A stretch of DNA of 64,000 nt from positions 7,068,001 to 7,132,000 of the forward strand of contig CATNEN010000029.1 of the NCBI GenBank assembly GCA_950097015.1, written 5' to 3'. Source of the stretch: Macrostomum hystrix. Its lineage: Eukaryota; Animalia; Platyhelminthes. The notes under the pieces are model-generated. The model was given only the letters and a program-made list of their open reading frames with translations, searched no databases and had not been told where the DNA came from. Below are positions 21,401 through 51,845 of the stretch, one piece after another (within the stretch, counting starts at the first letter, position 1; every line of letters begins with the position of its first letter). Both the position numbers and the translations under genes were made by a program.

Positions 21401-24400
21401 CAGAGCCGGTCTCGCTGCTCTCTCCCCCCGCCCTCAGGCAGCGGGCTCACCTTCATAGCCTACCCGGACCTGTTCGAGTCGCTCCCAGCTGCACCGGCGT
21501 GGAGCGCCGTGTTTTTCATGATGCTACTACTCCTGGGATTTTCTTCCCAACTGACAATGTCGGAGTCTCTCGTCACCTCCGTGCACGATCTGCTGCCGCG
21601 ACAGTACAAAAATAAAAAATTCAGAATCATCATCTTCTCCTGCCTGTGCATTGTGGGCATCTGTCTGGGCTTGTTGTTCACTTGTCAGGTAAATTGCACA
21701 AACCATCCGAGGAGTTCAATATCCCAGAACCTGTAGGACTATGTACTGAGGTCCATGTTCCGTATCTGTCTAGGTAGCGATTGAATTCAATTACAAATCT
21801 AGATACTAATAATTGCCAGCGTACTTATTTTTGTAGGGGGTTTTAGCCTAGTGGTTAGAGCATCGGACTCACGACTTGAAGGTCGGGGTTCGATTCCTGA
21901 CTCCACTGGAACAATTTGTGTCCTTTAGCAATATAACTAAATCTGCATTGCTTCAGTTCACCCAGCTGTTAAATAGGAGCCAGCATTAGCTGGGGTAATT
22001 GAGGGTGGGTGTGGCATCCCCCAGTCCATGGACTGATTTTATTTACTTATTCTTAACACAGAACTCACCTGAACAAATTGATTGCCCACTTCAGGCGGGT
22101 ATCTACTGGTTCGAATTGCTAAACAATTTCGCTGCGGATTGGAACCTTCTCATCATAGCCATATTCTTCTCATCGTCAATCATGTACTGCTACGGCTGGC
22201 GAAGGGTTGCAGTTGATGTGCAGTTCATGTCAGGGGTTCGACCCTCGCTGTATTGGTTCTCCAGCTGGTTCGCCACGCCGTTTCTGCTTTCGGTGAGTTG
22301 GGAAATTTCTGGAATTGCTAATCAATTGCTATCTAAAAACCTCAACATTCACAGATCCCAACACTCACAGATCCCAACATTCACAGATCCACACATTCAC
22401 AGATCCACACATTCACAGATCCCAACATACAAAGATCCACACATTCACAGATCCCAACATTCACCAATCCTCACATTCGCAGATCATAAAATTCACGGAT
22501 CCCAACAACAGCTCATAAAATTCACGAATCCTGACTTTCACAGATCCAAAAATTCACAGATCCCAACATTCACAGATCCCAACATTCACAGATCTCAACA
22601 CTCACAAATCCTATGGGGATGTGACTGTTTTTTCGTTAACTAGCATCGCTGGCCATCTCACAGCTCAGCAACTCAACCAGCTCGCATTGTAACAGCTGAA
22701 GGTCAAATGGATTCTAAAGGGCATCGATTGATAGGAGTTACGAAATCCTCATCTCTCACCGTTTCTCTGAGCTGTTCATTTGAGTTCACTTTTTTCCTGT
22801 CGGTTTGGGAGTTGAGTTAGTTCTCGTCCGTCTCACCTTTAGTCTCAGCTGAGAGATCCCGTGCTTTGAGCAATCGGAGCAGTCCGGGAAGGAAGACAGT
22901 CAGCTGACTCAAAACATGGGCGTGGCTGAGTTACTGTGTGGCTGAGTTTACTTGGCTAGTAAAGCTGCCAAGATGGCTTCAAAAGCCCGTTGCGGCTGCT
23001 TTCTGTTACACACAATAGCTGCTTGAAGTAAATATAAGATCAATTGCTCATCAATACTCACATAATACCACACTCCAATGACACTCCATGACACATTCCT
23101 TAAATACTAGAATCCTTAGAATCCTCAGCCCTAAATCTCTAGAAATCCCAGCTGGCAATCCCTAAAATCCCTAGCCCTCGATCCTTAAAATCAATAGCCC
23201 TCAATTTATAAAATACCCTGCCCGCGATTCTAAGAATCATCAGCCTTCAATTCCTAGAATCATCAGCCTTCAATTCCTAGAATCATCAGCCTTCAATTCC
23301 TAGAATCATCAGCCTTCAATTCCTAGAATCATCAGCCTTCAATTCCTAGAATCATCAGCCTTCAATTCCTAGAATCATCAGCCTTCAATTCCTAGAATCA
23401 TCAGCCTTCAATTCCTAGAATCATCAGCCTTCAATTCCTAGACTCATCAGCCTTCAATTCCTACAATCATCAGCCTTCAATTCCTAGAATCATCAGCCTT
23501 CAATTCCTAGAATCATCAGCCTTCAATTCCTAGAATCATCAGCCTTCAATTCCTAGAATCATCAGCCTTCAATTCCTAGAATCATCAGCCTTCAATTTCT
23601 AGAATCATCAGCCTTCAATTCCTAGAATCATCAGCCTTCAATTTCTAGAATCATCAGCCTTCAATTCCTAGACTCATCAGCCTTCAATTCCTAGAATCAT
23701 CAGCCTTCAATTCCTAGAATCATCAGCCTTCAATTCCTAGAATCATCAGCCTTCAATTCCTAGAATCATCAGCCTTGAATCCCTAGAATCATCAGCCTTG
23801 AATCCCTAGAATCACCAGCCTTGAATCCCTAGAATCATCAGCCTTGAATCTCTAGAATCATCAGCCTTGAATCCCTAGAATCATCAGCCTTGAATCCATA
23901 GAATCATCAGCCTTGAATCCCTAGAATCATCAGCCTTGAATCCCTAGAATCATCAGCCTTGAATCCCTAGAATCATCAGCCTTGAATCCCTAGAATCATC
24001 AGCCTTGAATCCCTAGAATCACCAGCCTTGAATCCCTAGAATCATCAGCCTTGAATCCCTAGAATCATCAGCCTTGAATCCCTAGAATCATCAGCCTTGA
24101 ATCCCTAGAATCACCAGCCTTGAATCCCTAGAATCATCAGCCTTGAATCCCTAGAATCATCAGCCTTCAATTCCTAGAATCATCAGCCTTCAATTCCTAG
24201 AATCATCAGCCTTCAATTCCTAGAATCATCAGCCTTCAATTCCTAGAATCATCAGCCTTCAATTCCTAGAATCATCAGCCTTCAATTCCTAGAATCATCA
24301 GCCTTCAATTCCTAGAATCATCAGCCTTCAATTCCTAGAATCATCAGCCTTCAATTCCTAGAATCATCAGCCTTCAATTCCTAGACTCATCAGCCTTCAA

Positions 24401-27400: not shown

Positions 27401-27490
27401 GAAGCCAACGGCCGCGGCGGCGCCACTGTGGCGAGCATCACGGACGGTGCGATCAGAAGACTGGCTGCTGAAGAGCAGGCCAATGCTGAG
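15415..27490 (+). CDS. SLC6: SLC6/NSS transporter domain 1 (amino-acid transporter type). Exons 15415-15682, 16529-16660, 17229-17372, 17447-17567, 18126-18258, 18678-18812, 20410-20513, 20674-20798, 21438-21688, 22095-22292, 25639-25806, 27197-27490 (691 codons)
   Basis: RGVWSSKFDFFFACLGYGVGLANFLRFP, GIGWAM..IYY, KTPSEEYF, WTDASSQAFFSLG..SSYN, GSGLTFIAYP. All phases join in frame; one GC-AG intron. The C-terminal end depends on whether the 27490 donor is used. Confidence 0.9.
15705..16420. repeat. 25-bp intronic minisatellite
   Basis: Unit gggatctagagcttctcacctggat. Confidence 0.95.
16720..17180. repeat. Degenerate 10-11-bp intronic minisatellite
   Basis: Unit tgagtagacat. Confidence 0.85.
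17780..18050. repeat. 13-bp intronic minisatellite
   Basis: Unit ggattccccttcg. Confidence 0.9.
18405..18580. repeat. 17-bp intronic minisatellite
   Basis: Unit gggatcaactgaggttt. Confidence 0.95.
18845..20375. repeat. 27-bp intronic minisatellite
   Basis: Unit gggattacggagagattagtagacaca. Confidence 0.95.
20985..21342 (+). mobile_element. tRNA-derived SINE family A, near full length
   Basis: Head gggggtgagtggcagagcggctaacgcg...gagctcgattcc; conserved body; (tat)n tail. Confidence 0.85.
21837..22040 (+). mobile_element. tRNA-derived SINE family B
   Basis: Head tagcctagtggttagagcatcggactcacgacttgaaggtcggggttcgattcc; central cttcagttcacccagctgttaaatagg; palindrome cagtccatggactg. Confidence 0.85.
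22340..22615. repeat. ~16-bp intronic minisatellite
   Basis: Unit cacagatcccaacatt. Confidence 0.9.
23230..25535. repeat. 23-bp intronic minisatellite with an internal 943-bp (41-unit) duplication
   Basis: Unit tagaatcatcagcctt(caattcc/gaatccc); the rare gactcat variant occurs at 23441/24384 and 23671/24614. Confidence 0.95.
25905..26470. repeat. 15-bp intronic minisatellite
   Basis: Unit attcatggattgctg. Confidence 0.95.
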
Positions 27491-28489
27491 GTGAGAGGCT
27501 GTGTACATACTCGTGTAGGCTGTGTACACACTCGTGTAGGCTGTGTACACCATCAAGGAGGCTGTGTACATACTCGTGGAGGCTGTATACAGCGTAATCC
27601 GCTACAGCATTAGCAGGTTTTGTACACAGCCTCCGAAATTGTGTACACGGTACAGCGGAATAAAAATTATTTTTTACCCCGCTCACGTGTACACTTATCT
27701 GAAAGTGTACACGTTTTTTACGAGTGTGTTTCGAAAGACTAAAACCTTTTTTGTTCTACAACCAGACAGTAAAACTTTTAGCAGCCCACTGGAATAGATA
27801 ATTATGTATAGATGCGAGATTGTGTCTTGCTCCGTATTGAAAATAGAAAAGCAGGTGACCAAGAGATAAAAAAGTACAAATTTAAATAACAGTCGCATGC
27901 TTTACAAGCTTAGCTAATGGATTAGCAGTCTAAAAAACTGATGTTTGCGTGTTTTTCGTATTCAAGTCTGGTCCCATGGTTTTTTAGAAATTTTCTCTAA
28001 TCCATGGCAACAAAAATCGAAGCAAGATTGTTTAAACAAAATAATTTCCCGATGTGGAATCGAAGAAAATGATCAGGAAATGAGCTGCAAAAGCAGGGCT
28101 AGGTAAGAAGCGAGTATAACAAATGAGCTGCACGGTTTGATAAATGATGAATTGAGAAAAATGACAATAAGGCTGAATAAATTTATTTGCGATCAATTGG
28201 GAATAGATTGGCAGGTAGTCAAGGCAAGAAATAAAATTTAGAATAAACGAACCACAAGAAAAAATTCATAACAGAAATATGAATTTTCATAGAAAATAAT
28301 TGCACGAAAGCGAGGAATTTTTTACTAAATTCTGAATTGTGAATCACAAACTTAATTAGTTTACATTCGGGAAGTCATTGAATACTAAATGATCTTATAT
28401 ACGCACTGATCAGCAAATGCGTCACGCAAATTAACTAAATTACTCAATAGTTACTCAAATGAGTCATTAGTTATACGTATGAGACAGTG

Positions 28490-28865
28490 GTAACTATGAT
28501 GAGTCAGAAGCCCCTATGATTAGTCATTAGTTACTATGATGAGTCATTAGCTACCAGGATGAGTCATGAGCTACCAGGATGAGTCATTGGCTACTAGGAT
28601 GAGTCATTGGCTACTAGGATGAGTCATTAGCTACCAGGATAAGTCATTAGTTACCAGGATGAGTCATTAGCTACCAGGATGAGTCATTGGCTACTAGGAT
28701 GAGTCATTAGTTACCAGGATGAGTCATTAGCTACCAGGATAAGTCATTGGCTACCAGGATAAGTCATTAGTTACCAGGATGAGTCATTAGCTACCAGGAT
28801 GAGTCATTGGCTTCTAGGATGAGTCATTATAGTTACCAGGATGAGTCATTAGCTCCCAGGATGAG
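28490..28865. repeat. 20-bp minisatellite just upstream of the SLC6 domain-2 acceptor
   Basis: Unit gagtcattagctaccaggat. Confidence 0.95.
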
Positions 28866-34900: not shown

Positions 34901-37900
34901 CTGCATTTTTATGACGATTGGTTGAATATTTTGGGAGATACAGAAAAAAGAAAATGTGAGTACTATTATTTACAGTAATAATAGTTTTTGACTAGTATTT
35001 GAAAATACGCAAACATGGAAATATGGAAATACCTCCTTGATCTAAAATTAAATGGTGCATTATCCTAATTTCTATTTTCGATCGCACCTGTTCACTTATT
35101 TTTCTTCTGTCAACAAAAACCAACTCAACCCAGATATTCAGCATCTGCATTGTACTCGGCCTGCTGCTCATTATTGTGCTGTTCATACTGGCAGTCAGGG
35201 ACACCAGATCCCTCATTGGGATCCGTCTGTTCATCCGGCCGAACTGGGAGATCCTGACCGAGCCGCAGGCCTGGTACGAGGCGCTGGTTCAGGTGTTCTA
35301 CAATCTGGGCATCGGTTTTGGCTGCCTCATCAACCTGTCCAGTTATAACCGGTTCCACACTGGCTGCAAGAAGTGCGACTTGAGAATGGCTTTGTTTTCA
35401 TCCAAATTCTTCTAAATAAGAAAATTAATTATCAAAGTTCCACTCAGCACTAAATCTCCCGGAACTGTTTTATTTTCCAATTCCAATTTTCCCACTTCCA
35501 ACTTTCCCGATTCAAACTTTTCCCAATTTGAATTTACTCAAATCAAATTCTACACGAATAAATTTTTCCCAATTCAAGTTTTTTTCCAAGTAAAAACAAT
35601 CCCAGCTCAAGTTGATCCCAATTCAAGTTAAACCCAATTCAAGTTAATCCCAATTTAAGTTAATCCCAATTCATGTTAATCCCAATTCAACTTAGTCCCA
35701 ATTCAAGTTAATCCTAATTCAAGTTAATCCCGATTAAATTTAATCCCAATTCAAGTTCATCCCGATTGAATTTAATCCCAATTCAAGTTATTCCCAATTT
35801 TAGTAAATCCAAATTCAAATTTAATCCTGTTTCAAGTTAATCCCAATTAAATTTTTCCTAAATCAAATTAATCTTGCTTTAGATTCTTATCAGTTGAAAT
35901 TCTTCCGAATTCAATTTTTCCAGCCGAAAATCATACCCAATCAAAATATCGCCCCACTGAGAGTTCGCTGACCATTCACCCGCAGGACGGCAGTTTCCGT
36001 GGCCATCATAGACTTCCTCGTCAGCTTCTTCTGCGGCTTCATCCTGTTCTCATTCGCTGGAATCATTCTGTCCACGGACAGCTCTTTGGACATCTCCAGC
36101 CTCTTCGATGACAGTGAGCTTTGGTTATAATCTTACTAGTACACTGACTGAACGCAAGTCATTGTTATTGTTTTTGTTGTGCATGCATCACGTCCCAGTC
36201 ACGTGACCTTCTCGCCTGGCTGCTGTTTACCCGCCGCTCAATTTACGCTTTTCTGTCCCACTGGCCAATCGACGCGCGGATTGCAGATCTTGGATTTCGC
36301 TACAGCGTCTTCCTCATGTCCGCGACATCGGCCTCGGCGAATCCCGGCTTCCGCTGGGCCACCTGCATCTGGAGCCTCATCCTGGCCCTGCTCAGCTTCT
36401 CATCCGAGTGCCTGCACACCCTAGTGCTCACCGATGTGCTCAACATCTGGCTGAAAGGCAGGTGCGCCAACGCACCCGCATCCGTTCGCTCAATTCTGGA
36501 CCGGTGGTGGCCGGTGCTGAGCCTGTTCTGCAGCCTGCTGGCATTCGCCTCTCTGCCGCTGTTTAGCGCGGTAACTATGCGCACCCCGACCCACAATGTC
36601 CGCCCATTTCGCTAACATTAACTTACATTCTAACATTTTTAGCGATTAATGACTAACTAAATAACCAGCGATAAATATAGCATTAACAGTAAGGACTACC
36701 AAGCCATTTTTCCGCCCGTTTTTATACCAAGGGGGGGGGAATTTCCCCCCCCCTGACAATTTTTTTGCTGCATCAGAACGAAACAATGCAAGCACACGAA
36801 ACTCAAGAACACGGGCCAACTTTTTGTTGCGCATCTTCTGAAACAAGAAACAAGTCGCCAACTCTTCAGACCGTCGAGATATTCAATGTTTCTGGCCGAA
36901 GGTCAGATTTTTCCCATAAGAGCTAGTGTATTTCATACACCACTATACACGAATTTGCACTGCGCCTCAGTGCGACCTTCAACAAGTGGCACCAGCCGAC
37001 TATGGAGTCCCTAAAGCGAATTTCTCTACTTTCTCTAATAAAGCCTCGATATTGGCCTAAACTCAACTATTACTTGTTTAAGGTCCAGCTACTCCGTCTA
37101 GATAAAGGTCGGTGACCGCCGAAGTCGGAGATGATGCAAGCACATTCGGGTGACATGCTGATAAAGTTTGAAGGTCTGGAAATGCCGCACATTGCGCAGT
37201 GCAAATTCGTGTATAGTGGTGTATGAAATACACTAGCTCTTATGGGAAAAATCGGACCTTCAACCAGAGCCATTGAATATCTCGACGGTCTAAAGAGCTG
37301 GCGACTTATTTCTTGTTTCAGAAGATGCGCAACAAAAAGTTGGCCCGTGTTCTTGAGTTTCGTGTGCTTGCAGAGAAAGTAGAGAAAACCCCCCCCTTGG
37401 TAGTTCTACTGTTAACAACGGAAAAACCACGCTATTTTACGCCCTGTGGAACGACCACTGGGGTATTTCAAATACCCGCTGCCTAATTCACGACAGCTCC
37501 CAAACCGAATGACCGATTTTTGTCCACCATATGAATCTAAATTCTCCGTCCAACGTCAGCATCGTCAAGATATTCAGTGATTCTTATCGAAGATCCTGGT
37601 GACAAGGACAACAACATTTTGTGATTCTGGAAGTTGTTGAATATTAAATATTTTAGGCGATCCTGAAAAAAGCAGAATGTAGATATTTTAAATGCTTCGT
37701 GGTCATTTCTATACTCTCAATTGGTCAAGGAAGGCCTTTTACTAACAAACAATGTCCCCAGGCTCCCTGGCTGTCATGTTCTCATCCTACTCGGTGCTGC
37801 TAGCCAGGCAACCAGCCTGGGTGAGCTCGCTGCTCTACTTCACCTCGGCTGGACTCACTATGCTCAACCTGGCCGTCAGCGCCGACTGCCTCTCGACCAT

Positions 37901-40900
37901 CACCTTCACCACCGCCACCGTGACACGGCGTCTATGCGGCCAGCTGCCCGTTACTTTTCACGACCTTCTGCGCGTGGACGGAGCCACAGTTCGCGCCTGG
38001 TGGCTGCCCGCCTTTTGCCTGTCGATGGCTGTGCTGCAGCTGCCCCTGCTGGCTCCAGTGCGCACTGTGGCTTGACTTGCTTGAATATACTCACGAGCTG
38101 GCGATGCACTATTAGGCTAGAGATGGCTAGGGTGATTGTGACGAAATCCTAGGGAAATTTCGGGATAGAAAGGGTGTGAGTTGAATTCTATCAGCCTAGA
38201 ATCCTTTCTGACCAAGTATTCTTAGCTGAGCTTCATTAGACTATCTATCTGAGTGCACTAACATACTAATCGACTAATTAAATAACAATATGTTTTTGCG
38301 TAGATTTGAGCATGTCCAAGGCGTTTGTCTGTTTACAAATTCGGGAATCAGAAAGCCAGCTTGGCCAACCCCACAGACCGGCTTTCACCTTGTTGAACTA
38401 TTGGACGCCTACGGCATCGCCTGGTCTGTGGCGCTGCTTTGCCTCATGGAGTTGGCCACCATCAGCTGGGTTTTCGGCGTGCAGCAGTTTAGCGCCATCA
38501 TCAAGATCATGCTGCGCGGCAATTTGTCACTTTGGTGGAAGGCGTGCTGGACTGTCATTTCGCCTGCAGCCCTGCTGGTGAGTGTTCCAAGAGCAATGCT
38601 CTGATCACCTGGACAACAAAGCCTGATCTTACTTACTCATACTGGGCTCTTCACGCTGAAGTCCTTCCTGAATTCCTACTCCTGAAGTCCGTCTCCTAAT
38701 ATCCTTCTCCTGAAGTCCTTCTCCTGAAGTCCTTCTCCTGAAGTCCTTCTCCTGAATTCCTACTCCTGAAGTCCGTCTCCTAATATCCTTCTCCTGAAGT
38801 CCTTCTCCTGAAGTCCTTCTCCTGAAGTCCTTCTCCTGAATTCCTACTCCTGAAGTCCGTCTCCTAATATCCTTCTCCTGAAGTCCTTCTCCTGAAGTCC
38901 TTCTCCTGAAGTCCTTCTCCTGAATTCCTACTCCTGAAGTCCGTCTCCTAATATCCTTCTCCTGAAGTCCTTCTCCTGAAGTCCTTCTCCTGAAGTCCTT
39001 CTCCTGAAGTCCTTCTCCTGAATTCCTACTCCTGAAGTCCGTCTCCTAATATCCTTCTCCTGAAGTCCTTCTCCTGAAGTCCTTCTCCTGAAGTCCTTCT
39101 CCTGAATTCCTACTCCTGAAGTCCGTCTCCTAATATCCTTCTCCTGAAGTCCTTCTCCTGAAGTCCTTCTCCTGAAGTCCTTCTCCTGAATTCCTACTCC
39201 TGAAGTCCGTCTCCTAATATCCTTCTCCTGAAGTCCTTCTCCTGAAGTCCTTCTCCTGAAGTCCTTCTCCTGAATTCCTACTCCTGAAGTCCGTCTCCTA
39301 ATATCCTTCTCCTGAAGTCCATCCCGAAGTGCATAACTCGAAATCCTCATATTGAAGACCTCTCGCTGAAGTTCTATTTTTAAAGTCGTCATAAAGGCCT
39401 CTGACCGTTAAACAGCCAGCTTGAAGTCCGCCTCCTGAAATAGTAATTCAGAACTCCTGACCTTTGCAACCAATGCTCAGGTCAATCTAGTGATCAAATG
39501 GTTCAACAAGTCCACAGAAGTAGGCCTGCCGCTGCCAGAATGGACCAAAACAGCCAGCTACGTGCTGCAATTCCTGCCACTGCTGCCGCTGCCCATCTGC
39601 ATCGCCTACTACTTGGTCTTCGAAGCCAAAGGGTCACTTAAGCAGGTAACTACTACTAGTTCTACTACTACTTATACTCAATGACAGAGCGGTTAACTCG
39701 TTTTCCTCTCGCACCAAACTCCCTGAGCTCGATTCCGCGGCGAGGCGACATTTATCTGGGGCGCAGCCGCGGAGAGGTTTGGGGGCTTGTCGTGCAATTT
39801 ACGCCCTTGAGGGCCAACCTCCAAGGCACAGTGAGAGTGTACACTGCCTGACGATGAGAAAGTCAGAGCAGATGTACACACCTGTGTGAGCGTATGCCTG
39901 CGTACAGTATCTGTGTGCGTGTGAGTCAGGATTCAGCGGAATCGGCAGAATTGCCTCCTTGCTGGCTGCAGGTCTAGTGTCACCAAATTATGTGCCATTG
40001 CCCATTACCCACTACTACTACTGCTACTACTACTACTACTACTACTACTGCTACTACTACTACTACTGCTACTACTACTACTACTACTACCACCACTACT
40101 ACTACTACTACTACTACCACTACTACTACTACTACTACTAATAATAATAATAATAAAAATCCCTCAGCGTATGAAGTCCCTCGTCACCATCAACAAGAGC
40201 ATGTTCAATGGCGAAGAGTTCAATAAGCAAGTGTACGGCAATCACGCCACGGAGGCAACCGCCGAGGCAGCTGTTAGGAGGCCTCCGCGCAGTGTCAGCG
40301 CCATGGTGGACGGCGTCGACGCTATCACCGACGATCCGGACGGCAGTGGAGTGAGCGGCACCGGCAGCAGTATCAGCAGAGGCCTGGATGTCAGCAACGC
40401 GCCGAACGGCAAGGCCAATCATCGCCGGCTGACCAGCAAACGTCGGGTGAGCATCTACGGCAACGAGTTCGCCATCAGGATGGACTCAACGAACTCCAAG
40501 ATGCAGTTCTCTCGGCTATCGAGCGGGCAGCAGCAGCCGCTGTCGACAGTGCACAGTCTGTCATCGTCTTCGTCTTCTAGGATGCACAAGAGCAGCTCGG
40601 GCAGCGGCGGCAGCGGCGGTGGCAGAGGAAAGAAGCTGGACCTGCGCGGCATGATGGCAGCGCAGAAGAACTCGGTGCTGCCACTCGTCAACTTGGCCGC
40701 CACCATGGCCATCAACGGCGGCGGCAGCGGCCGGAGGAATTTCTGCCGACAATGCGGAGGTGAGATTTCAGAATGCAATTTTCCAGGAATTGTGCTGCAG
40801 ATTGTAATCCATTCGTTTGAGCTTCAGACTTCCGACCGAAGAGAGACATTTTATGCAATTGAGCAAGACACTTCATTCCCCAAGTGCTTCAATTTACCCG

Positions 40901-42361
40901 GCTATAAAATGGGTATCAGCATCAGCTGGGTTAGATATTAGTGGGGTGGGTGTGGCGGCCTCCTTAGTCCACGGACTGAACAGCTGTAGGCAGCTTTTAG
41001 AAGCGACGCGCAATAGCTGCGGCTGTGCCACAGGCTGAATATCTGGCCCAACTATTCTAGGTGTAATTTCTATATCTAACCATTCTATGGAAATGGTTGC
41101 ACTGCTGTGGGATTAGAGCACTGCTGTTTGATCCAGATGAGTAGGGATTTGAGCACTGCTGTTTGATCCAGATGAGTAGGGATTTGAGCACTTCTGTTTG
41201 ATCCAGATGAGTAGGGATTTGAGCACTGCTGTTTGATCCAGATGAGTAGGGATTTGAGCACTGCTGTTTGATCCAGATGAGTAGGGATTTGAGCACTGCT
41301 GTTTGATCCAGATGAGTAGGGATTAGAACACTGCTGTTTGATCCAGATGAGTAGGGATTTGAGCACTGCTGTTTGATCCAGATGAGTAGGGATTTGAGCA
41401 CTGCTGTTTGATCCAGATGAGTAGGGATTTGAGCACTGCTGTTTGATCCAGATGAGTAGGGATTTGAGCACTGCTGTTTGATCCAGATGAGTAGGGATTA
41501 GAGCACTGCTGTTTGATCCAGATGAGTAGGGATTAGAACACTGCTGTTTGATCCAGATGAGTAGGGATTTGAGCACTGCTGTTTGATCCAGATGAGTAGG
41601 GATTTGAGCACTGCTGTTTGATCCAGATGAGTAGGGATTTGAGCACTGCTGTTTGATCCAGATGAGTAGGGATTTGAGCACTGCTGTTTGATCCAGATGA
41701 GTAGGGATTAGAGCACTGCTGTTTGATCCAGATGAGTAGGGATTTGAGCACTGCTGTTTGATCCAGATGAGTAGGGATTTGAGCACTGCTGTTTGATCCA
41801 GATGAGTAGGGATTTGAGCACTGCTGTTTGATCCAGATGAGTAGGGATTTGAGCACTGCTGTTTGATCCAGATGAGTAGGGATTTGAGCACTGCTGTTTG
41901 ATCCAGATGAGTAGGGATTTGAGCACTGCTGTTTGATCCAGATGAGTAGGGATTAGAACACTGCTGTTTGATCCAGATGAGTAGGGATTTGAGCACTGCT
42001 GTTTGATCCAGATGAGTAGGGATTAGAACACTGCTGTTTGATCCAGATGAGTAGGGATTTGAGCACTGCTGTTTGATCCAGATGAGTAGGGATTTGAGCA
42101 CTGCTGTTTGATCCAGATGAGTAGGGATTAGAGTACTGCTGTTTGATCCAGATGAGTAGGGATTTGAGCACTGCTGTTTGATCCAGATGAGTAGGGATTA
42201 GAGCACTGCTGTTTGATCCAGATGAGTAGGGATTTGAGCACTGCTGTCCATCGTGACTTTTTATTTCAGTCTCTGGCAGTCGAGAAACTATACTTAACAG
42301 TGCCAGTGCCACTGCTGAAGCAGATACAGAAGGTGTGATTTCAAAGGCGCCACTTCAGCAG

Positions 42362-42429
<68 letters not shown>

Positions 42430-42565
42430 GGAACAGCAGCAGCAGCAGCAGCAGCAAAAACAACAACAACAGCAGCAGCAGCAGCAGCAGCAGCAAAAAC
42501 AACAACAACAGCAGCAGCAGCAGCAGCCGGAACAGCAGCAGCAGCAGCAGCAGCAAAAACAACAA

Positions 42566-42597
<32 letters not shown>

Positions 42598-42610
42598 AAA
42601 ACAACAACAA

Positions 42611-42666
<56 letters not shown>

Positions 42667-42805
42667 ACAGCAACAGCAGCAGCAGCAGCAGCATCAGCAG
42701 CAGCAGCAGCAGCAGCAGAAGGAACAGCAGCAGCAGCAGCAGCAAGACAGTGCTTGCCAAACTGACCCATCAGTAACAGAGCACGTTAGACGTAACTCAA
42801 TGTGA
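28905..42805 (+). CDS. SLC6: SLC6/NSS transporter domain 2 with long C-tail. Exons 28905-29049, 29838-30113, 31666-31810, 32298-32433, 35134-35372, 35986-36113, [36287-36570 or 37762-38057], 38377-38577, 39481-39645, 40168-40759, 42270-42805
   Basis: [72 protein letters not shown]. All phases join in frame; no in-frame ATG upstream of TM1 (stop at 28842). The last exon join is inferred from phase only. Confidence 0.85.
29197..29760. mobile_element. Non-autonomous DNA element with TTAA flanks (partial copy of the 36687 family)
   Basis: ttaa|cagtagtactaccaag ... ggcagttctattg|ttaa; body matches 36687-37411. Confidence 0.75.
30360..30635 (-). mobile_element. SINE family B
   Basis: Reverse complement of the 21837 copy plus additional 3' segment. 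Confidence 0.85.
31255..31554 (-). mobile_element. SINE family A
   Basis: Minus-strand head ggggttgagtagcagagcggtctaacgcg...gagttcgattcc. Confidence 0.8.
31980..32210. repeat. ~36-bp intronic minisatellite
   Basis: Unit tctactgataggtgtgaagctaactaattatatag with variants. Confidence 0.85.
32478..32748 (-). mobile_element. SINE family B
   Basis: Highly similar reverse complement of 21837-22040. Confidence 0.85.
33210..34287 (+). mobile_element. Internally deleted P-superfamily DNA transposon
   Basis: TIRs caaggacttttatataatagcatctggactggaa / ttccagtccagatgctattatatagaagtccttg; exact 7-bp TSD tccagcc at 33203-33209 and 34288-34294. Confidence 0.9.
33465..34133 (+). pseudogene. P-element/THAP9-like transposase fragment (222 aa, no THAP domain, truncated)
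   Basis: Motifs [54 protein letters not shown]. Confidence 0.85.
34484..34960 (+). mobile_element. Unclassified fold-back dispersed repeat family C
   Basis: Internal inverted repeat catcgtcaagatattcagcgattcttgtcg / cgacgagaatctttgaacatcttgacgatg; homologs at 14720 and 37460. Confidence 0.65.
35600..35870. repeat. 16-bp intronic minisatellite
   Basis: Unit ttcaagttaatcccaa. Confidence 0.85.
36287..36570 (+). CDS. SLC6 domain 2 TM8-TM9 exon, version X1
   Basis: ttgcag acceptor (phase 1), gtaact donor (phase 0); [32 protein letters not shown]. Confidence 0.75.
36687..37411. mobile_element. Non-autonomous long-TIR DNA element with TTAA target duplication
   Basis: ttaa|cagtaaggactaccaag ... 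cttggtagttctactg|ttaa; 179-bp inverted arms 36787-36965 and 37194-37372. Confidence 0.85.
37460..37690 (+). mobile_element. Repeat family C, deleted copy
   Basis: Matches 34484-34660 and 34850-34960. Confidence 0.6.
37762..38057 (+). CDS. SLC6 domain 2 TM8-TM9 exon, version X2
   Basis: tccccag acceptor (phase 1), gtgcgc donor (phase 0); [42 protein letters not shown]. Confidence 0.7.
38660..39320. repeat. 14-bp intronic minisatellite with 84/98-bp higher-order blocks
   Basis: Unit tgaagtccttctcc with periodic variants gaattcctactcc and gtctcctaatatcc. Confidence 0.95.
39681..40157 (+). mobile_element. SINE family A with expanded (TAC)n(TAA)n tail
   Basis: Body matches the 20985 copy; ~150-bp triplet tail ends 10 nt before the exon starting at 40168. 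Confidence 0.85.
40895..41052 (+). mobile_element. 5'-truncated SINE family B
   Basis: Matches the 3' half of the 30360 and 32478 copies. Confidence 0.7.
41100..42245. repeat. 35-bp intronic minisatellite
   Basis: Unit gagcactgctgtttgatccagatgagtagggattt. Confidence 0.95.
42356..42745 (+). repeat. (CAG/CAA)n tract, ~130 codons, polyglutamine in the inferred terminal exon
   Basis: In-frame interruptions (K, PE, E, H); 99-bp internal duplication (ccg at 42428 and 42527). Confidence 0.95.
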
Positions 42806-43429
42806 GAAAGACTTAACGAATACACCAACCTGTCATCGTGTCGCTAGTTTTTTCTTAGAAATAATTTATTATCAAGCTGCGAGTCTATAAGTAAGAAAAA
42901 GGCTAGCTTACCAATTGCTGTCTAATCAATTTAGTGTTATTTGACACAGCCGCCACTGGCGCCCAAGGCTTTCTGACCCAGTACAATATACGAGCTACAG
43001 TCGCTGAGTCTATTTATTCATTGCGTCACTCTTTTATAACTTGATCATGATTCGGCCATCTAGGAATCCATGATCTTTTGATTGCTCTCATTATGATCAA
43101 TCAGTTTGTCGGATTGAAAAATAATTGTTTCATTTTATCACTTAAAGGTAGTTTGAAAAAAGCTTTTCGTAAGCAAAACAATTCAAAAGCGCATATAGAA
43201 AATGCTGTATTTGTACAGTGGGTTGTGTCTCAGTGCGTATTTTAAAGTAAAAAACAGAAAACTTTTGGCCACTGTGACTCGGTATTGGCAGGTGCACACA
43301 TCTAGGTTTAAATTTGATTTTCATATAAAAGTTATAGCAAAATGACATTAATTGATTGACAAGGGACAGCGATGCAAATTTAAAACCAATTGTGATAACG
43401 GTTGGTTATCCATCAATCAGGTAGATTTC

Positions 43430-45050
43430 CGTCTAACAAGTAGGCTTCTGTCTAAAAGGTAGAATTTCTTCAGTCTAGCAGGTAGAATTCTGTCTAACAT
43501 GCCAATTTCTGTCTAACAGGTATATTTCTGTCTAGCAGGTAGACTTCTGTCTAACAGCTAGACTTCTGTCTAACAGGTAGACCTCTGTCTAACAGGTAGA
43601 CCTCTGTCTAACAGGTAGACCTCTGTCTAACAGGTAGACCTCTGTCTAACAGGTAGACCTCTGTCTAACAGGTAGACCTCTGTCTAACATGTAGATTTCT
43701 GTCTAACAGGTCGATTTCTGTCTAACAGGTCGATTTCTGTCTAACAGGTCGATTTCTGTCAAACAGGTCGATTTCTGTCTAGCAGGTCGATTTCTGTCTA
43801 ACAGGTTGATTTCAGTCTAAAAGGAGATTTCTGTCTAACAGGTCGATTTCTGTCTAACAGGTCGATTTCTGTCTAACAGGTAGACCTCTGTCTAACAGGT
43901 AGACCTCTGTCTAACAGGTAGACCTCTGTCTAACAGGTAGACCTCTGTCTAACATGTCGATTTCTGTCTAACAGGTAGACCTCTGTCAAACAGGTCGATT
44001 TCTGTCTAACAGGTCGATTTCTGTCTAACAGGTCGATTTCTGTCTAACAGGTCGATTTCTGTCTAGCAGGTCTAGCAGGTCGATTTATGTCTAACAGGTT
44101 GATTTCTGTCTAACAGGTCGATTTCTGTCTAACAGGTCGATTTCTGTCTAACAGGTCGATTTCTGTCAAACAGGTCGATTTCTGTCTAGCAGGTCGATTT
44201 CTGTCTAACAGGTTGATTTCTGTCTAACAGGTCGATTTCAGTCTAACATGGTGATTTCTGTCTAAAAGGAGATTTCTGTCTAACACAGGGGTGGGCAAAC
44301 CTATTTGCTGGCGGGCCAAAGAGAGAGCCTAAAAGACGACAGCGGGCCGCATTGACTGTATAAATATGAGATAGGGGAGAGATGAGACACGGGAGAGATG
44401 AGACACAGGAAAGATGGGACACGAGAGAGATGAGACACGGGAGAGATAAGACAGGGAAGAGATTAGACAGGGAAGAGATTAGACACGGGAGAAATTAGAC
44501 AGGGAAGAGATTAGACACGGGAGAAATTAGACAGGGAAGAGATTAGACACGGGAGAAATTAGACACGGGAGAGATTAGACACGGGAGAAATTAGACACGG
44601 GAGAGATTAGACACGGGAGAAATTAGACAGGGAAGAGATTAGACACGGGAGAGATTAGACACGGGAGAGATTAGACACGGGAGAGATTAGACAGGGAAGA
44701 GATTAGACACGGGAGATATTAGACACGGGAGAGATTAGACATGGGAGAGATTAGACACGGGAGAGATTAGACACGGGAGAGATTAGACACGGGAGAGATA
44801 AGACAGGGAAGAGATTAGATACGAGAGCGATGAGACACGGGAGATATTAGACACGAGAGAGATGAAACAGGACACTGTAGATGTCAGAAGGGGCAACGGG
44901 CCGGATTTGGGAGCTTCGAGGGCCGCATCTGGCCCGCGGGCCGGAGTTTGCCCACCCCTGGTCTAACAGGTCGATTTCTGTCTAACAGGGGGGAGACTTC
45001 TGTCTAACAGGTCGATTTCTGTCTAACAGGCAGACATCTGTCAGTTATAT
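43430..45050. repeat. 19-bp minisatellite interrupted by a MITE
   Basis: Unit gtctaacaggtagacctct / gtctaacaggtcgatttct. Confidence 0.95.
44286..44960 (+). mobile_element. hAT (Charlie-like) MITE, intact ends, expanded internal minisatellite
   Basis: Perfect 15-bp TIR caggggtgggcaaac / gtttgcccacccctg; 8-bp TSD gtctaaca on both sides. Confidence 0.9.
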
Positions 45051-45314
45051 GGCAAGGACAAGTTCTTAGTAGAATAAGAATAGAATAAATAAATAATATG
45101 TAGGGCTAGACTACCCTCTTTACAGCCGTTTCGGATAAAAAAAGCTGTAGAAATAGTCTTCAGGCAAAGTAATGAATCATAAATCTAGATGTCTAATTAC
45201 TGGTACTTTTTAATAAGACCCATTACTAAACTGATAATTACATTCAACACACCAGCGGTGCTCACAGGATCTAAAAAGTGTTGCCCGATGCTGCTCAAAC
45301 TACGAGTAAGTTTG

Positions 45315-46404
45315 TCACTGCTCCGGCAGCGATGATTCCGAATCGCAGAGAGTCACTTGGCGGTGCTGAAGCTGCCAGCGCTTGTAACCGGCCCTGTGAC
45401 CGCGCCACAGCTGCCAGATCCACAGCAGGAAGCCCGACAGGACAAACGGTGTCAGCACAATGCCGAAGCAGATCTCCCAGAAGGAGTATTGCCTCAGTCT
45501 GAGGTAGCGAAGTTCGCGAAAATGCTGCAGTGCTGACACAGAGAGCAGGTTGCAGTACACTATCAGAGGCAGCATTAGCAGCATACTCAACAGGTCCAGC
45601 AGGGCAACGCAGTGCCTTAGCCGAGGTCCATTGCGAAAGTACTGAGTTAGGCCCGGCTGTTCAATGTGCACGGGCAGCGGCTGCAGGCACAGCTCGCACT
45701 GCTGCTTCTTGGACATGCCCAGCCAGCGGGTCAGGCAGTGCCGGTGCAGGCTGCCGACCGTGCCCTGGCAGCCGCATAGGCGGCGAAGCGGCCCCGAGGA
45801 GGCTCCGTCCAGGCAGATTCGGCAGACCGGAGTGTCGTCCGACTTGTGCTGCTTCAATTGAAAGATTTGCAGGGCTATAAGGAGATTTTCGGATCGGTGG
45901 GGTTGCAGGGTCGAGAAGGTCGCAGGGTCGATGGGGTTGCAGGGTCGATGAGGTTGCAGGGTCGATGGGGTTTCAGGGTCGATGGGGTTGCAGGGTCGAT
46001 GGGGTTTCAGGGTCGATGTGGTTTCAGAGTCGATGGGGTTGCAGGGTCGAGAAGGTCGCAGGGTCGATGGGGTTGCAGGGTCGATGGGGTTTCAGGGTCG
46101 ATGGGGTTGCAGGGTCGATAATGTTGCAGGATATTTCGAAGGTTTCCTTCACAAAAATCAAGCAAGACATCACCTCCAGCTGAAGCTCCGTGTTGGCAGT
46201 AATATCCATGCTACTCCCGGCCGGAGGGTCGCTTCTAGCTAAGAAGCTGTGGTCACTTCGACATCCGTTGACTTCGGAGGTGTACGTTGCCATAGTCAGA
46301 GTGTTCAATAGGCCAGGCAAAGGCAAAGCTGCGGCATGTGCGGCAGCGGTAGGCGCCGGGGTGTCCTGCTCTGCGTCATCCTTCTGTGACGGGTTTTTCG
46401 ACAT
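45315..46404 (-). CDS. MARCHF: MARCH-family RING-CH E3 ubiquitin ligase (MARCH2/3-like). Exons ~46404-46174 and 45851 (or 45848)-45315; start codon uncertain
   Basis: CRIC..LCGCQGT..HRHCL..W..CELC followed by two hydrophobic segments. Phase-0 donor gtgatg; tandem AAG/CAG acceptors. Confidence 0.85.
45890..46130. repeat. 20-bp minisatellite in the MARCH intron
   Basis: Unit gggtcgatggggttgcaggg and variants. Confidence 0.9.
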
Positions 46405-46584
46405 CAAAGCCAATAAAGAACAGAGCAGTTTAGAAAATTACTTCTCATTAATAACTCTGCAATTTCCCACTTTACCTAGCTACCGCTGCTGCGTCTATCT
46501 GCTGATAGACTTTTAACAAGCACCATAGACTGTTTTAGTTATCAATACGAGACTAGAATGTAATGGTTGTGTTTGCATGTAGAA

Positions 46585-49100
46585 TTAACATGTAGAATTC
46601 TGTCTAACAGATGGACTTCTGTCCTACATGTAGAATTCTGTCTAACAGATGGACTTCTGTCCTACATGTAGAATTCTGTCTAACAGATGGACTTCTGTTT
46701 TACATGTAGAATTCTGTCTAACAGATGGACTTCTGTCCTACATGTAGAATTCTGTCTAACAGATGGACTTCTGTCCTACATGTAGAATTCTGTCTAACAG
46801 ATGGACTTCTGTTTAACATGTAGAATTCTGTCTAACAGATGGACTTCTGTCCTACATGTAGAATTCTGTCTAACAGATGGACTTCTGTCCTACATGTAGA
46901 ATTCTGTCTAACAGATGGACTTCTGTCCTACATGTAGAATTCTGTCTAACAGATGGACTTCTGTCCTACATGTAGAATTCTGTCTAACAGATGGACTTCT
47001 GTCCTACATGTAGAATTCTGTCTAACAGATGGACTTCTGTCCTACATGTAGAATTCTGTCTAACAGATGGACTTCTGTCCTCCATGTAGAATTCTGTCTA
47101 ACAGATGGACTTCTGTTTAACATGTAGAATTCTGTCTAACAGATGGACTTCTGTCCTACATGTAGAATTCTGTCTAACAGATGGACTTCTGTCCTACAGT
47201 AGAATTCTGTCTAACAGATGGACTTCTGTCCTACATGTAGAATTCTGTCTAACAGATGGACTTCTGTCCTACATGTAGAATTCTGTCTAACAGATGGACT
47301 TCTGTCCTACATGTAGAATTCTGTCTAACAGATGGACTTCTGTCCTACATGTAGAATTCTGTCTAACAGATGGACTTCTGTCCTACATGTAGAATTCTGT
47401 CTAACAGATGGACTTCTGTTTAACATGTAGAATTCTGTCTAACAGATGGACTTCTGTCCTACATGTAGAATTCTGTCTAACAGATAGACCTTTGTTTAAC
47501 ATGTAGAATTCTGTCTAACAGATGGACTTCTGTCCTACATGTAGAATTCTGTCTAACAGATGGACTTCTGTCCTACATGTAGAATTCTGTCTAACAGATA
47601 GACCTTTGTTTAACATGTAGAATTCTGTCTAACAGATGGACTTCTGTCCTACATGTAGAATTCTGTCTAACAGATGGACTTCTGTCCTACATGTAGAATT
47701 CTGTCTAACAGATGGACTTCTGTCCTACATGTAGAATTCTGTCTAACAGATGGACTTGTGTCCTACATGTAGAATTCTGTCTAACAGATGGACTTCTGTC
47801 CTACATGTAGAATTCTGTCTAACAGATGGACTTCTGTCCTACATGTAGAATTCTGTCTAACAGATGGACTTCTGTCCTACATGTAGAATTCTGTCTAACA
47901 GATGGACTTCTGTTTAACATGTAGAATTCTGTCTAACAGATGGACTTCTGTCCTACATGTAGAATTCTGTCTAACAGATAGACCTTTGTTTAACATGTAG
48001 AATTCTGTCTAACAGATGGACTTCTGTCCTACATGTAGAATTCTGTCTAACAGATGGACTTCTGTCCTACATGTAGAATTCTGTCTAACAGATAGACCTT
48101 TGTTTAACATGTAGAATTCTGTCTAACAGATGGACTTCTGTCCTACATGTAGAATTCTGTCTAACAGATGGACTTCTGTCCTACATGTAGAATTCTGTCT
48201 AACAGATGGACTTCTGTCCTACATGTAGAATTCTGTCTAACAGATGGACTTGTGTCCTACATGTAGAATTCTGTCTAACAGATGGACTTCTGTCCTACAT
48301 GTAGAATTCTGTCTAACAGATGGACTTCTGTCCTACATGTAGAATTCTGTCTAACAGATGGACTTCTGTCCTACATGTAGAATTCTGTCTAACAGATGGA
48401 CTTCTGTCCTACATGTAGAATTCTGTCTAACAGATGGACTTCTGTCCTACATGTAGAATTCTGTCTAACAGATGGACTTCTGTCCTACATGTAGAATTCT
48501 GTCTAACAGATGGACTTCTGTCCTACATGTAGAATTCTGTCTAACAGATGGACTTCTGTCCTACATGTAGAATTCTGTCTAACAGATGGACTTCTGTCCT
48601 ACATGTAGAATTCTGTCTAACAGATGGACTTCTGTCCTACATGTAGAATTCTGTCTAACAGATGGACTTCTGTCCTACATGTAGAATTCTGTCTAACAGA
48701 TGGACTTCTGTCCTACATGTAGAATTCTGTCTAACAGATGGACTTCTGTCCTACATGTAGAATTCTGTCTAACAGATGGACTTCTGTTTAACATGTAGAA
48801 TTCTGTCTAACAGATGGACTTCTGTCCTACATGTAGAATTCTGTCTAACAGATAGACCTTTGTTTAACATGTAGAATTCTGTCTAACAGATGGACTTCTG
48901 TCCTACATGTAGAATTCTGTCTAACAGATGGACTTCTGTCCTACATGTAGAATTCTGTCTAACAGATGGACTTCTGTTTAACATGTAGAATTCTGTCTAA
49001 CAGATGGACTTCTGTTTAACATGTAGAATTCTGTCTAACAGATGGACTTCTGTCCTGCATGTAGAATTCTGTCTAACAGATTGACTTCTGTCTAACATGT
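46585..49100. repeat. 38-bp (2x19) minisatellite
   Basis: Unit acatgtagaattctgtctaacagatggacttctgtcct. Confidence 0.95.
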
Positions 49101-49502
49101 ATTATTTTCTTCATGATTCGTCACTTCATATCTGTATATCAGTAGTCCTCAAATATGTATTCATTAAACTATTTTTCAAGAAAAAACGAAGACAACTACG
49201 AGAACAGCAACAAGAAAAAATGTTAATTTTGTCTTTGCGGTCTCATGAAATATTATTTTATTAACTATCAGTTCAATAAAGGCTGGAGCAACAATTGTGT
49301 AGTGCATCCATGGGAACACTAAGGCCTAAACAGAATGGTGGTACAGAAGTCATTTCTAATCACTCGGACGTCATTCGCGCTAGATCATAACTAAGTAAAT
49401 AAGTGCTATGACAACTAATTATTTGAGAGCTACTTTGGGAACAAATGTTAATCGGGATCAGAGTTTGCTGTTGAATGTTAAGGCGAAGATCAGAATCGCC
49501 AC

Positions 49503-49922
<420 letters not shown>

Positions 49923-49929
49923 TTAAGCT

Positions 49930-50620
49930 AGGCGCCTCTTCAGGTGACACCCAGACTAAATAAAGCTAGGCGCCCATTCTAACAGGTGATGCCCAGACTA
50001 ATTAAAGCTAGGCGCCCATTCTAACAGGTGATGCCCAGACTAATTAAAGCTAGGCGCCCATTCTACCAGGTGACACACAGACTAAATAAAGCTAGGCGCC
50101 CATTCTAACAGGTGATGCCCAGACTAATTAAAGCTAGGCGCCCATTCTAACAGGTGATGCCCAGACTAATTAAAGCTAGGCGCCCATTCTACCAGGTGAC
50201 ACACAGACTAATTAAAGCTAGGCGCCCATTCTACCAGGTGACACACAGACTAATTAAAGCTAGGCGCCCATTCTACCAGGTGACACACAGACTAATTAAA
50301 GCTAGGCGCCCATTCTACCAGGTGACACACAGACTAATTAAAGCTAGGCGCCCATTCTACCAGGTGACACACAGACTAATTAAAGCTAGGCGCCCATTCT
50401 AACAGGTGACACACAGACTAATTAAAGCTAGGCGCCCATTCTAACAGGTGACACACAGACTAATTAAAGCTAGGCGCCCATTCTAACAGGTGACACACAG
50501 ACTAATTAAAGCTAGGCGCCCATTCTAACAGGTGATGCCCAGACTAATTAAAGCTAGGCGCCCATTCTAACAGGTGATGCCCAGACTAATTAAAGCTAGG
50601 CGCCCATTCTAACAGGTGAC
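49930..50620. repeat. 42-bp minisatellite upstream of the copy A coding exon
   Basis: Unit ccagactaattaaagctaggcgcccattctaacaggtgatgc. Confidence 0.95.
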
Positions 50621-51204
50621 ACCAATATTATTTAAACATGGGCGTCTTTTAAACAATTAAATTATGAAATTACACTAACCGATTGCCTTATAAAATTGCA
50701 TCTGACTCATTCACGCTTTTAAAAGAAAGCAAGTAGACCTACCTATAGAAGAGCAATGGTTTAATATGAGACCGAAATAACAACTAAAAAATGGGTACCA
50801 TGTAAATAGTTGAAGAAAATAAATCAAAGTCATATGATGAAAGCCGATTCATTCCACACAATTGGATCGTCAGTCAGTCGCAATCTGCTGTTGAAAGTTT
50901 ATATTTTTCCTTTATTGATCTTGCTCAATACACTTGACTGTGTTCCTCTAACAGGATGACACTAGTCCCAATTTCAGATACATTATTTGTTTATTTAGAG
51001 GCTATGTCTTCAGCAAATTTCTGTTAGGGATATTTTTGGCAAACTACTACAGGGCAGAATTCTAGGGAAATTTTGACGCAGCAGCTAGACTACAAGAACT
51101 TCTTGGAACTAATTGTAGACTTTAACAACTAAGACACACAACTTAGCGCTTAGTTGCAAACACTTGCTACTTCAAGTAGTCGGTGAAGCTAATCGCCGGA
51201 TCAT

Positions 51205-51845
<641 letters not shown>

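What the first reader, a model, noticed from the sequence alone, without database searches (positions are those of the whole stretch)
36287..38057. Duplicated TM8-TM9 exons that can only be used mutually exclusively
Seen: two exons (284 and 296 nt) both enter in phase 1 and exit in phase 0. Both encode the EL4b-TM8-TM9 segment and share an R-x(0-1)-WW..FC..A..LPL motif. Including both or neither breaks the frame. Known: TM8 supplies Na2-site ligands (LeuT T354/S355; DAT D421/S422). By-eye alignment gives LSFSSE in X1 (hydroxyls kept) but TMLNLA in X2 (Ser lost), and X2 also lacks the Asp after TM8. Inference: splicing could swap the ion-coupling or gating helix of domain 2.
Basis: partly seen in the sequence, partly recalled or inferred. 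Interest (0 to 1): 0.75.

Follow-up and report, generated by a model that had tools for sequence, protein, structure and literature searches.

The report
Duplicated alternative TM8-TM9 exon in flatworm SLC6
A Macrostomum flatworm transporter gene of the SLC6 (neurotransmitter/amino-acid transporter) family carries two old, very different copies of the exon for its eighth and ninth membrane helices; RNA shows the first copy in use, while the second looks like a conserved spare whose splicing could not be shown here.

Summary
Exons X1 (36287-36570, 284 nt) and X2 (37762-38057, 296 nt) both enter in phase 1 and leave in phase 0. Both sit where the TM8-TM9 exon belongs, between the TM7 and TM10 exons. 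Including both or neither gives an early stop.

- **Homology:** X1 and X2 are each other's best non-self match in the window (E about 0.005). There is no DNA similarity, so the duplication is old.
- **X1 use:** RNA contigs from three runs show 36113>36287 and 36570>38377. X1 is the expressed form.
- **X2 coding signs:** its codon usage was reached by 0 of 5000 shuffles. It has AG/GT splice sites and a TACTAAC branch site.
- **X2 in a relative:** a Macrostomum lignano gene model (UniRef100_A0A1I8HVN2) has an X2-type segment, 60% identical and gap-free, joined directly to TM10.
- **X2 RNA:** low-depth contigs cover it in two of three runs. No X2 junction was listed, and the one contig crossing its acceptor is unspliced.

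Mutually exclusive use is therefore likely (about 0.55) but unproven. This is a new member of a known kind. Other agents of this scan reported many mutually exclusive exon clusters elsewhere in this genome.

The parts
35986..36113 (+). Constitutive TM7 exon of SLC6 domain 2. It ends in phase 1 (one base carried over).
   Evidence: RNA joints 35372>35986 and 36113>36287 with GT..AG ends. The translation [25 protein letters not shown] is TM7-like.
36287..36570 (+). X1, the expressed TM8-TM9 exon (284 nt, phase 1 in, phase 0 out). It contains the Ser-Ser pair in LLSFSSE.
   Evidence: Joints 36113>36287 (runs X2, X3) and 36570>38377 (runs X1, X3). Codon score +0.40 per codon, GC3 0.82. 0 of 5000 shuffles reach its score.
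36725..37402 (.). Foldback repeat element inside the X1-X2 intron. It lies within a larger high-copy stretch, about 36570-37612.
   Evidence: Inverted arms 36787-36965 and 37194-37372 are 96% complementary. The outer arms are TACCAAGGGGGGGG / CCCCCCCCTTGGTA. Summed contig depth is in the hundreds to thousands, with many variants.
37762..38057 (+). X2, the second TM8-TM9 exon copy (296 nt, same phases as X1). It is coding-like and conserved in M. lignano, but its splicing was not demonstrated.
   Evidence: Open in the correct frame. Codon score +0.23 per codon against -0.45 and -0.59 in the other frames; GC3 0.78. 0 of 5000 shuffles and 0 of 164 intronic windows reach its score. 60% identical and gap-free to P0001 residues 2-91. 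Low-depth contigs at 37613-38000 and 37798-37949.
38377..38577 (+). Constitutive TM10 exon, entered in phase 0.
   Evidence: Pfam SNF positions 408-474, E = 2.7e-11. Joints 36570>38377 and 38577>39481. 94% identical to P0001.
21438..21688 (+). TM8-TM9 exon of the neighbouring canonical SLC6 domain 1, used as a reference for exon structure.
   Evidence: Pfam SNF positions 325-405, E = 4.9e-19. Matches TM8-9 of GAT3, GAT1, TauT and DAT at 1e-14 to 1e-11. Phase 1 in and phase 0 out, read from the sequence.

Best explanation
X1 and X2 are ancient tandem duplicates of the exon that encodes EL4b, TM8, the TM8-TM9 loop and TM9 of a divergent SLC6 domain in a Macrostomum flatworm. Each exon is 2 mod 3 in length, so only transcripts carrying exactly one of them keep the reading frame. 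Transcripts with both or neither hit an early stop and would be lost (inferred: nonsense-mediated decay).

X1 is the major form in whole-animal RNA (shown). X2 is kept as a coding-competent exon and is most likely spliced in place of X1 in a minority of transcripts, cells or stages (inferred). That would replace the helix pair that carries the Na2-site and substrate-pocket residues of TM8 and the TM8-TM9 cytoplasmic loop. The two proteins would then differ in ion coupling, gating or substrate preference (inferred, untested).
For: - **Exon anatomy:** same phases, similar lengths, frame break when both or neither is included.
- **Homology of X1 and X2:**
- **Exon structure:** the canonical neighbouring domain has a TM8-9 exon with the same phases.
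- **X1 junctions in RNA:**
- **X2 coding signal:** 0 of 5000 shuffles reach its codon score; GC periodicity p = 8e-4; GC 0.63 against 0.31-0.47 in the flanking introns.
- **X2 splice signals:** AG acceptor with a TACTAAC branch site 20 nt upstream, and a GT donor. The open frame closes 5 codons outside each splice site.
- **Weak donors:** both X1 (GTAACT) and X2 (GTGCGC) have weaker donors than the constitutive exons (GTGAGC, GTGAGT). This is my own reading; such a pattern is usual for alternative exons.
- **X2 RNA coverage:** depth 3.3-3.9 in two of three runs, against 5-9 for X1, while the other unique introns have zero depth, including the one just after X2.
- **Conservation:** the M. lignano model A0A1I8HVN2 has an X2-type segment with no gaps or stops over 90 residues, joined to TM10, at a locus colinear with the window over 15 kb. 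The cytoplasmic tail at similar identity has 13% gaps.
Against: - No contig shows 36113>37762 or 38057>38377.
- The one contig crossing the X2 acceptor is unspliced.
- Contigs drop rare forms, six joints were not displayed, and only three shallow runs of one study were available.
- X2 is only 57-60% identical between species, against 94% for TM10 and 76-79% for TM11-12, so constraint on it is weaker.
- In a substitution-only neutral simulation, staying stop-free at that identity has probability about 0.2, so open-frame retention alone is weak evidence.
- The M. lignano protein is a 5'-partial gene model and may be ab initio. It shows conservation, not splicing.
- No X1-type exon could be searched for in M. 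lignano.
Confidence: 0.55

Rival explanations
1. X2 is a relic or rarely used duplicate. It is still open and exon-like, but it is not productively spliced between TM7 and TM10. The RNA over it is retained intron, or read-through from the adjacent transcribed repeat.
For: - Only X1 junctions are seen.
- The 388-nt contig 37613-38000 runs unspliced through the acceptor and starts exactly where the high-copy repeat ends.
- X2 evolves about as fast as the disordered tail.
- Stop-free survival is not improbable under neutrality.
Against: - X1 and X2 share no DNA similarity, so the duplication is old. A dead exon of that age should have lost its codon periodicity, frame and splice signals, yet X2 keeps all of them.
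- X2 is gap-free against M. lignano.
- The intron after X2 has no RNA depth, whereas plain intron retention or read-through should continue into it.
Confidence: 0.22
2. X2 is the first coding exon of an internal transcript. This could be an alternative or repeat-driven start in the X1-X2 intron, or SL trans-splicing at the X2 acceptor. The transcript would splice on to TM10 and encode a truncated TM8-TM12 protein plus tail, starting at ATG 37752 or at Met5 of X2.
For: - The contig 37613-38000 carries 149 nt upstream of X2 on the same molecule.
- An ATG at 37752 is in frame with X2.
- The M. lignano model also begins at the X2-type exon, with no upstream SLC6 part.
Against: - The start of X2 ([10 protein letters not shown]) resembles the canonical GLAFIAYP start of this exon, and the exon keeps the phase-1 acceptor that fits the TM7 exon.
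- A five-helix fragment of a LeuT-fold transporter has no known function (my own knowledge).
- No start site or spliced-leader loose end at 37762 was listed.
- The M. lignano model lacks a start Met, so it is a partial model rather than evidence for a start.
Confidence: 0.15
3. X2 is a chance open frame in a GC-rich patch and is unrelated to TM8-TM9.
For: - X2 alone has no Pfam or PDB match.
- A second frame of X2 is also open.
- At 63% GC, a 98-codon open frame has a chance of roughly 0.06 per frame (my own arithmetic).
Against: - Frame-specific codon usage.
- Reciprocal best hit with X1.
- E = 6e-27 to a Macrostomum SLC6 model in which this segment precedes TM10, with the SNF match reaching into it.
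Confidence: 0.03

Closest known systems
Mutually exclusive exons arising from tandem exon duplication, kept exclusive by reading-frame incompatibility (criteria in Hatje et al. 2017, PMC5740500; evolution in Martinez-Gomez et al. 2022, PMC9741552)
   Same: - Neighbouring exons of similar length and the same phase, with detectable homology.
- They encode the same structural element.
- Joint inclusion shifts the frame.
- One exon is ubiquitous and the other minor.
- Ion transport genes are enriched for such events.
   Different: - Only one of the two exons has junction support here.
- The pair is far more diverged than typical pairs (about 27% identity over 71 residues).
- SLC6 is not mentioned in the main text of either paper.
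SLC12A1 (NKCC2) exon 4 A/B/F variants
   Same: A secondary-active Na+-coupled transporter swaps a membrane helix plus the adjacent loop through mutually exclusive exons, which changes ion affinity (my own knowledge; the SLC12A1 event is cited in PMC9741552).
   Different: - Different fold and family.
- The NKCC2 variants are close in sequence and functionally characterised.
- Here the swapped part is TM8-TM9 of a LeuT-fold domain, and no function has been tested.
Canonical SLC6/NSS transporters (GAT, GlyT, DAT, SERT, LeuT)
   Same: - TM1, TM5-6 and TM10-12 of this domain match Pfam SNF.
- Intron positions around TM8-9 match the canonical neighbouring domain.
   Different: - Both TM8-TM9 versions are too diverged for a Pfam or PDB sequence match.
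- The domain appears to be the second half of a tandem double-SLC6 reading frame.
- I know of no SLC6 gene with alternative TM8-9 exons, and four literature searches found none.

Membership tests
Mutually exclusive exon cluster (Hatje et al. 2017 criteria) | Neighbouring exons in one gene with similar length and the same reading phase | tested here: met
   284 and 296 nt, both phase 1 in and phase 0 out, 1191 nt apart.
Mutually exclusive exon cluster (Hatje et al. 2017 criteria) | Sequence similarity between the exons | tested here: met
   Weak but above chance: z = 4.5-5.1 against shuffles; reciprocal best tblastn hits at E = 0.005 and 0.006; hhalign E = 0.021. No DNA similarity.
Mutually exclusive exon cluster (Hatje et al. 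2017 criteria) | No reads joining the two exons, unless joint inclusion shifts the frame | tested here: met
   No 36570>37762 joint was listed. Joint inclusion would in any case shift the frame.
Mutually exclusive exon cluster (Hatje et al. 2017 criteria) | Each exon has junction reads that bridge over the other | tested here: inconclusive
   X1: 36113>36287 and 36570>38377 were seen. X2: none listed, and one contig is unspliced across 37762. The data are only contigs from three shallow runs, and six joints were not displayed.
Mutually exclusive exon cluster (Hatje et al. 2017 criteria) | Both exons conserved in relatives | tested here: inconclusive
   An X2-type exon is present in M. lignano (60% identity, gap-free).
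SLC6/NSS TM8-TM9 segment | Match to Pfam SNF positions about 325-407, or to TM8-9 of solved SLC6 structures | tested here: not met
   X1 and X2 alone give no SNF hit at E <= 1 and no SLC6 hit in the PDB at E <= 10. In the M. lignano protein, only the last 15 residues of the X2-type segment fall inside the SNF match, from profile position 392.
SLC6/NSS TM8-TM9 segment | Located between TM7 and TM10, with the family's exon boundaries | tested here: met
   The flanking exons match SNF 218-282 and 408-474. The domain-1 TM8-9 exon (SNF 325-405) has identical phases and an equivalent end point.
SLC6/NSS TM8-TM9 segment | Na2-site hydroxyl pair on TM8 (LeuT T354/S355, DAT D421/S422) | tested here: inconclusive
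   X1 has Ser-Ser in SFSSE, like GFSSQ in domain 1. X2 has at most one hydroxyl under each of three possible registers (T-M, S-A, T-V). The register is unresolved because the AlphaFold model failed.

The most novel reading that the evidence does not exclude
In a tandem double-SLC6 protein, alternative splicing swaps the TM8-TM9 helix pair of the second, divergent domain between two forms. One form has a complete Na2 Ser-Ser pair. The other is an anciently conserved form with a depleted Na2 pair but a canonical HDLL gate motif. One gene would thus produce two transporters, or a transporter and a regulator, with different ion coupling. This would be the first mutually exclusive core-helix swap described in the SLC6 family.
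Probability: 0.3. Interest if true: 0.7.

Novelty: new member of a known kind. Interest (0 to 1): 0.45.

Why it matters
TM8 of SLC6 transporters carries ligands of the second sodium site and lines the substrate pocket. The TM8-TM9 loop is part of the cytoplasmic gate. A natural pair of interchangeable TM8-TM9 modules would offer a ready-made experiment on how this helix pair sets ion coupling and gating. It would also add the SLC6 family to the list of ion-transport genes that diversify by tandem exon duplication. In addition, it flags an annotation trap: the M. lignano model seems to start at the second copy, which is what can happen when a gene predictor cannot fit both frame-incompatible exons into one model.

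Tried and rejected
- **Word-index protein searches** with X2, X1 and the domain-1 exon gave zero hits. This is uninformative, because the length window excludes full-length SLC6 proteins.
- **ESM Atlas look-alikes of X2** scored 0.79 at best, which is no usable lead.
- **AlphaFold2 of the natural M. lignano fragment P0001:1-230**, with window exons as alignment rows, gave pLDDT 37. The model is unusable, so no fold search was run and the TM8 register stays open.
- **MAFFT alignment with domain-1 exons as extra rows** misplaced several rows. I used it only for the X1/X2/domain-1 TM8 register.
- **Search for docking/selector RNA pairing** between the three introns with RNAduplex gave z between -2.7 and +1.0, with whole-length spurious duplexes and no convincing site. 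One search timed out.
- **Exact-product look-ups** for P0001 and for the ATG-started X2 frame found nothing on record, so no M. lignano DNA was available and no dN/dS could be computed.
- **Neutral-evolution simulation** showed that stop-free survival alone is weak evidence (P about 0.2).
- **Literature searches** found no paper on SLC6 mutually exclusive exons or on Macrostomum exon clusters.
- **No third X-like exon** exists in the window.
Full report
**What is in the sequence**

The window is eukaryotic. Earlier notes of this scan place it in a Macrostomum flatworm, and the best database relative is a Macrostomum lignano protein.

On the + strand lies an SLC6 (Pfam SNF) domain split over many exons. 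The exons around the finding are:
- TM5-6, ending at 35372
- TM7, 35986-36113
- X1, 36287-36570
- X2, 37762-38057
- TM10, 38377-38577
- TM11-12, 39481-39645

All splice sites are AG/GT. X1 is 284 nt and X2 is 296 nt. Both take one base from the TM7 exon and end on a full codon. Translating the both-included and both-skipped versions in a local script gives a stop 13 codons into X2 and a stop after 6 codons respectively. The statement that only one-at-a-time use keeps the frame is therefore correct.

**Are they TM8-TM9, and are they duplicates?**

Neither exon alone matches Pfam SNF (E <= 1) or any SLC6 chain in the PDB (E <= 10). The assignment rests on context:
- The flanking exons match SNF positions 218-282 and 408-474, leaving about 283-407 for TM7 plus X.
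- The neighbouring canonical SLC6 domain in the same window has a TM8-TM9 exon at 21438-21688. It matches SNF 325-405 and TM8-9 of GAT3, GAT1, TauT and DAT at 1e-14 to 1e-11. It has the same phase-1 entry and phase-0 exit, just before the (A/T)G(I/F)(Y/H) start of TM10.
- In the M. lignano protein the SNF and PDB matches run back into the last 15 residues of the X2-type segment: CLGMAGLQLPLSTS against CVAFFIMGFPMITQ of GlyT2, from profile position 392.

X1 and X2 share no DNA similarity (z = 0.9). As proteins they are more alike than chance:
- BLASTP E = 0.048 over the C-terminal motif.
- Semi-global z = 4.5 and local z = 5.1 against composition-preserving shuffles.
- Reciprocal best non-self tblastn hits in the whole 64-kb window, E = 0.005 and 0.006, over 71 colinear residues.
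- hhalign E = 0.021.

There is no third copy. I read this as an ancient tandem duplication.

**Is X2 a real exon?**

A codon-usage log-odds model was trained on eleven other SLC6 exon segments of the window.
- X2 scores +0.23 per codon in the predicted frame, against -0.45 and -0.59 in the other frames.
- Left-out confirmed exons score 0.17-0.56, and X1 scores 0.40.
- None of 5000 shuffles (best of three frames) and none of 164 intronic windows reach X2's score.
- GC by codon position is 0.60/0.52/0.78 (p = 8e-4).

X2 is a GC island (0.63) in AT-richer intron. Its frame closes 5 codons outside each splice site. A TACTAAC branch site lies 20 nt before its AG. The donors of X1 (GTAACT) and X2 (GTGCGC) are both weaker than those of the constitutive exons.

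**RNA**

The record does not state their kind, but their GT..AG joints show they are RNA.

Joints seen:
- 35372>35986
- 36113>36287
- 36570>38377 (two runs)
- 38577>39481

X1 is therefore the form in the assembled transcripts.

X2 is covered in two of three runs by low-depth contigs: 37613-38000 at depth 3.3 and 37798-37949 at depth 3.9. X1 has depth 5-9. Every other unique intron stretch, including 38140-38296 just after X2, has zero depth.

No X2 junction was listed, and the 388-nt contig runs unspliced through the acceptor. That contig starts exactly where a high-copy repeat ends. This fits three readings: a partly processed X2-containing RNA, read-through from the repeat, or an internal transcript. 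Contigs drop rare forms and six joints were not displayed, so the absence of X2 junctions is weak evidence.

**Relatives**

The exhaustive HMMER search with X2 alone found one true relative (E = 6e-27). This is P0001, UniRef100_A0A1I8HVN2 of M. lignano, a 981-aa model without a start Met.
- Its residues 2-91 align gap-free to X2 at 60% identity. Identical blocks are [32 protein letters not shown] and LQLPL.
- The segment continues directly into TM10 (94% identity), TM11-12 (79%) and the tail (61%, with 13% gaps).
- The protein is colinear with the window from 37779 to 52787 and has no X1-like part.

X2-type has therefore not decayed in a relative, and a gene model there joins it to TM10.

Caveats:
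- A gene model is not RNA proof.
- X2 evolves much faster than its neighbours.
- A substitution-only neutral simulation gives P(no stop) of about 0.2 at this identity.
- No DNA of the M. lignano locus could be fetched, so there is no dN/dS.

**Residue-level reading**

Four alignment methods agree on X1 [11 protein letters not shown] against X2 [11 protein letters not shown].

On that register the Ser-Ser pair of X1, which matches GFSSQ of domain 1 and the D/T-S pair of known transporters, becomes Ser-Ala in X2 and Cys-Ala in M. lignano.

X2 also carries FHDLL, which is invariant in M. lignano. It aligns with VHDLLP of domain 1 at nearly the same distance from the exon end. This is the canonical Asp after TM8, so the claim that X2 lacks it does not hold. 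It is X1 that lacks a clean equivalent.

If FHDLL is used as the anchor, the Na2 pair would fall at T52-V53. If the W anchor is used, it would fall at T32-M33. The register is unresolved because the AlphaFold model failed (pLDDT 37). Under all three registers X2-type offers at most one hydroxyl. An altered Na2 site is thus plausible, but it is inference.

**Verdict**

My estimates for the competing readings are:
- Conserved alternative exon used in place of X1: 0.55
- Relic or unproductive exon: 0.22
- First exon of an internal transcript: 0.15
- Chance open frame: 0.03

Frame-enforced mutually exclusive exons from tandem duplication are well known, especially in ion-transport genes (PMC5740500, PMC9741552). 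I found no report of one in the SLC6 family. Other agents of this scan reported many mutually exclusive clusters elsewhere in this genome. I rate this a new member of a known kind, with moderate interest.

**Rule compliance**

The only joining was the local frame check.

Noticed in passing
window 25806-28860 (donor 25806|25807, exon 27197-27490, acceptor at 28860): The TM12 exon of SLC6 domain 1 has a GTAGGT donor after ...WQKKCKKEL, before its stop. A 294-nt phase-0 exon (KRIQPPADPP...EEQANAE) and the acceptor before DERLFDPNF...[13 protein letters not shown] (TM1 of domain 2) then give one continuous frame. A 2753-nt RNA contig reaches about 2.6 kb upstream of 35133 in the mRNA. Together these support the separate first-reader note of a tandem double-SLC6 gene (s1-381989).
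   Followed up: partly
window 36570-37612: A high-copy, transcribed repeat fills most of the X1-X2 intron. It includes a foldback element (36725-37402) with 179-nt arms that are 96% complementary. In pre-mRNA this hairpin would pull the X1 donor and the X2 acceptor close together. Whether that affects exon choice is unknown.
   Followed up: partly
window 20699-20701 and 36011-36013 (TM7 of both domains): Both SLC6 domains seem to have Asp where canonical transporters have the TM7 Asn of the Na1 site (LLDTVTSF in domain 1, IIDFLVSF in domain 2). This is by-eye reading only.
   Followed up: no
window 40165-52787: The M. lignano model P0001 continues colinearly far beyond the transporter core, at 40165-40731, 45331-45846, 49503-51585 (a duplicated unit) and 52578-52787. 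Either the gene has a very long C-terminal extension or the model merges neighbouring genes.
   Followed up: no
window 20067-20495, 25865-26539, 39890-40138, 42257-42802: Several long tandem or low-complexity repeats lie in or next to the gene: 9-aa DYGEISRHR-type units, ADSWI-type units, a TAC-rich run read as poly-Tyr or poly-Leu, and a long CAG (poly-Gln) tract.
   Followed up: no
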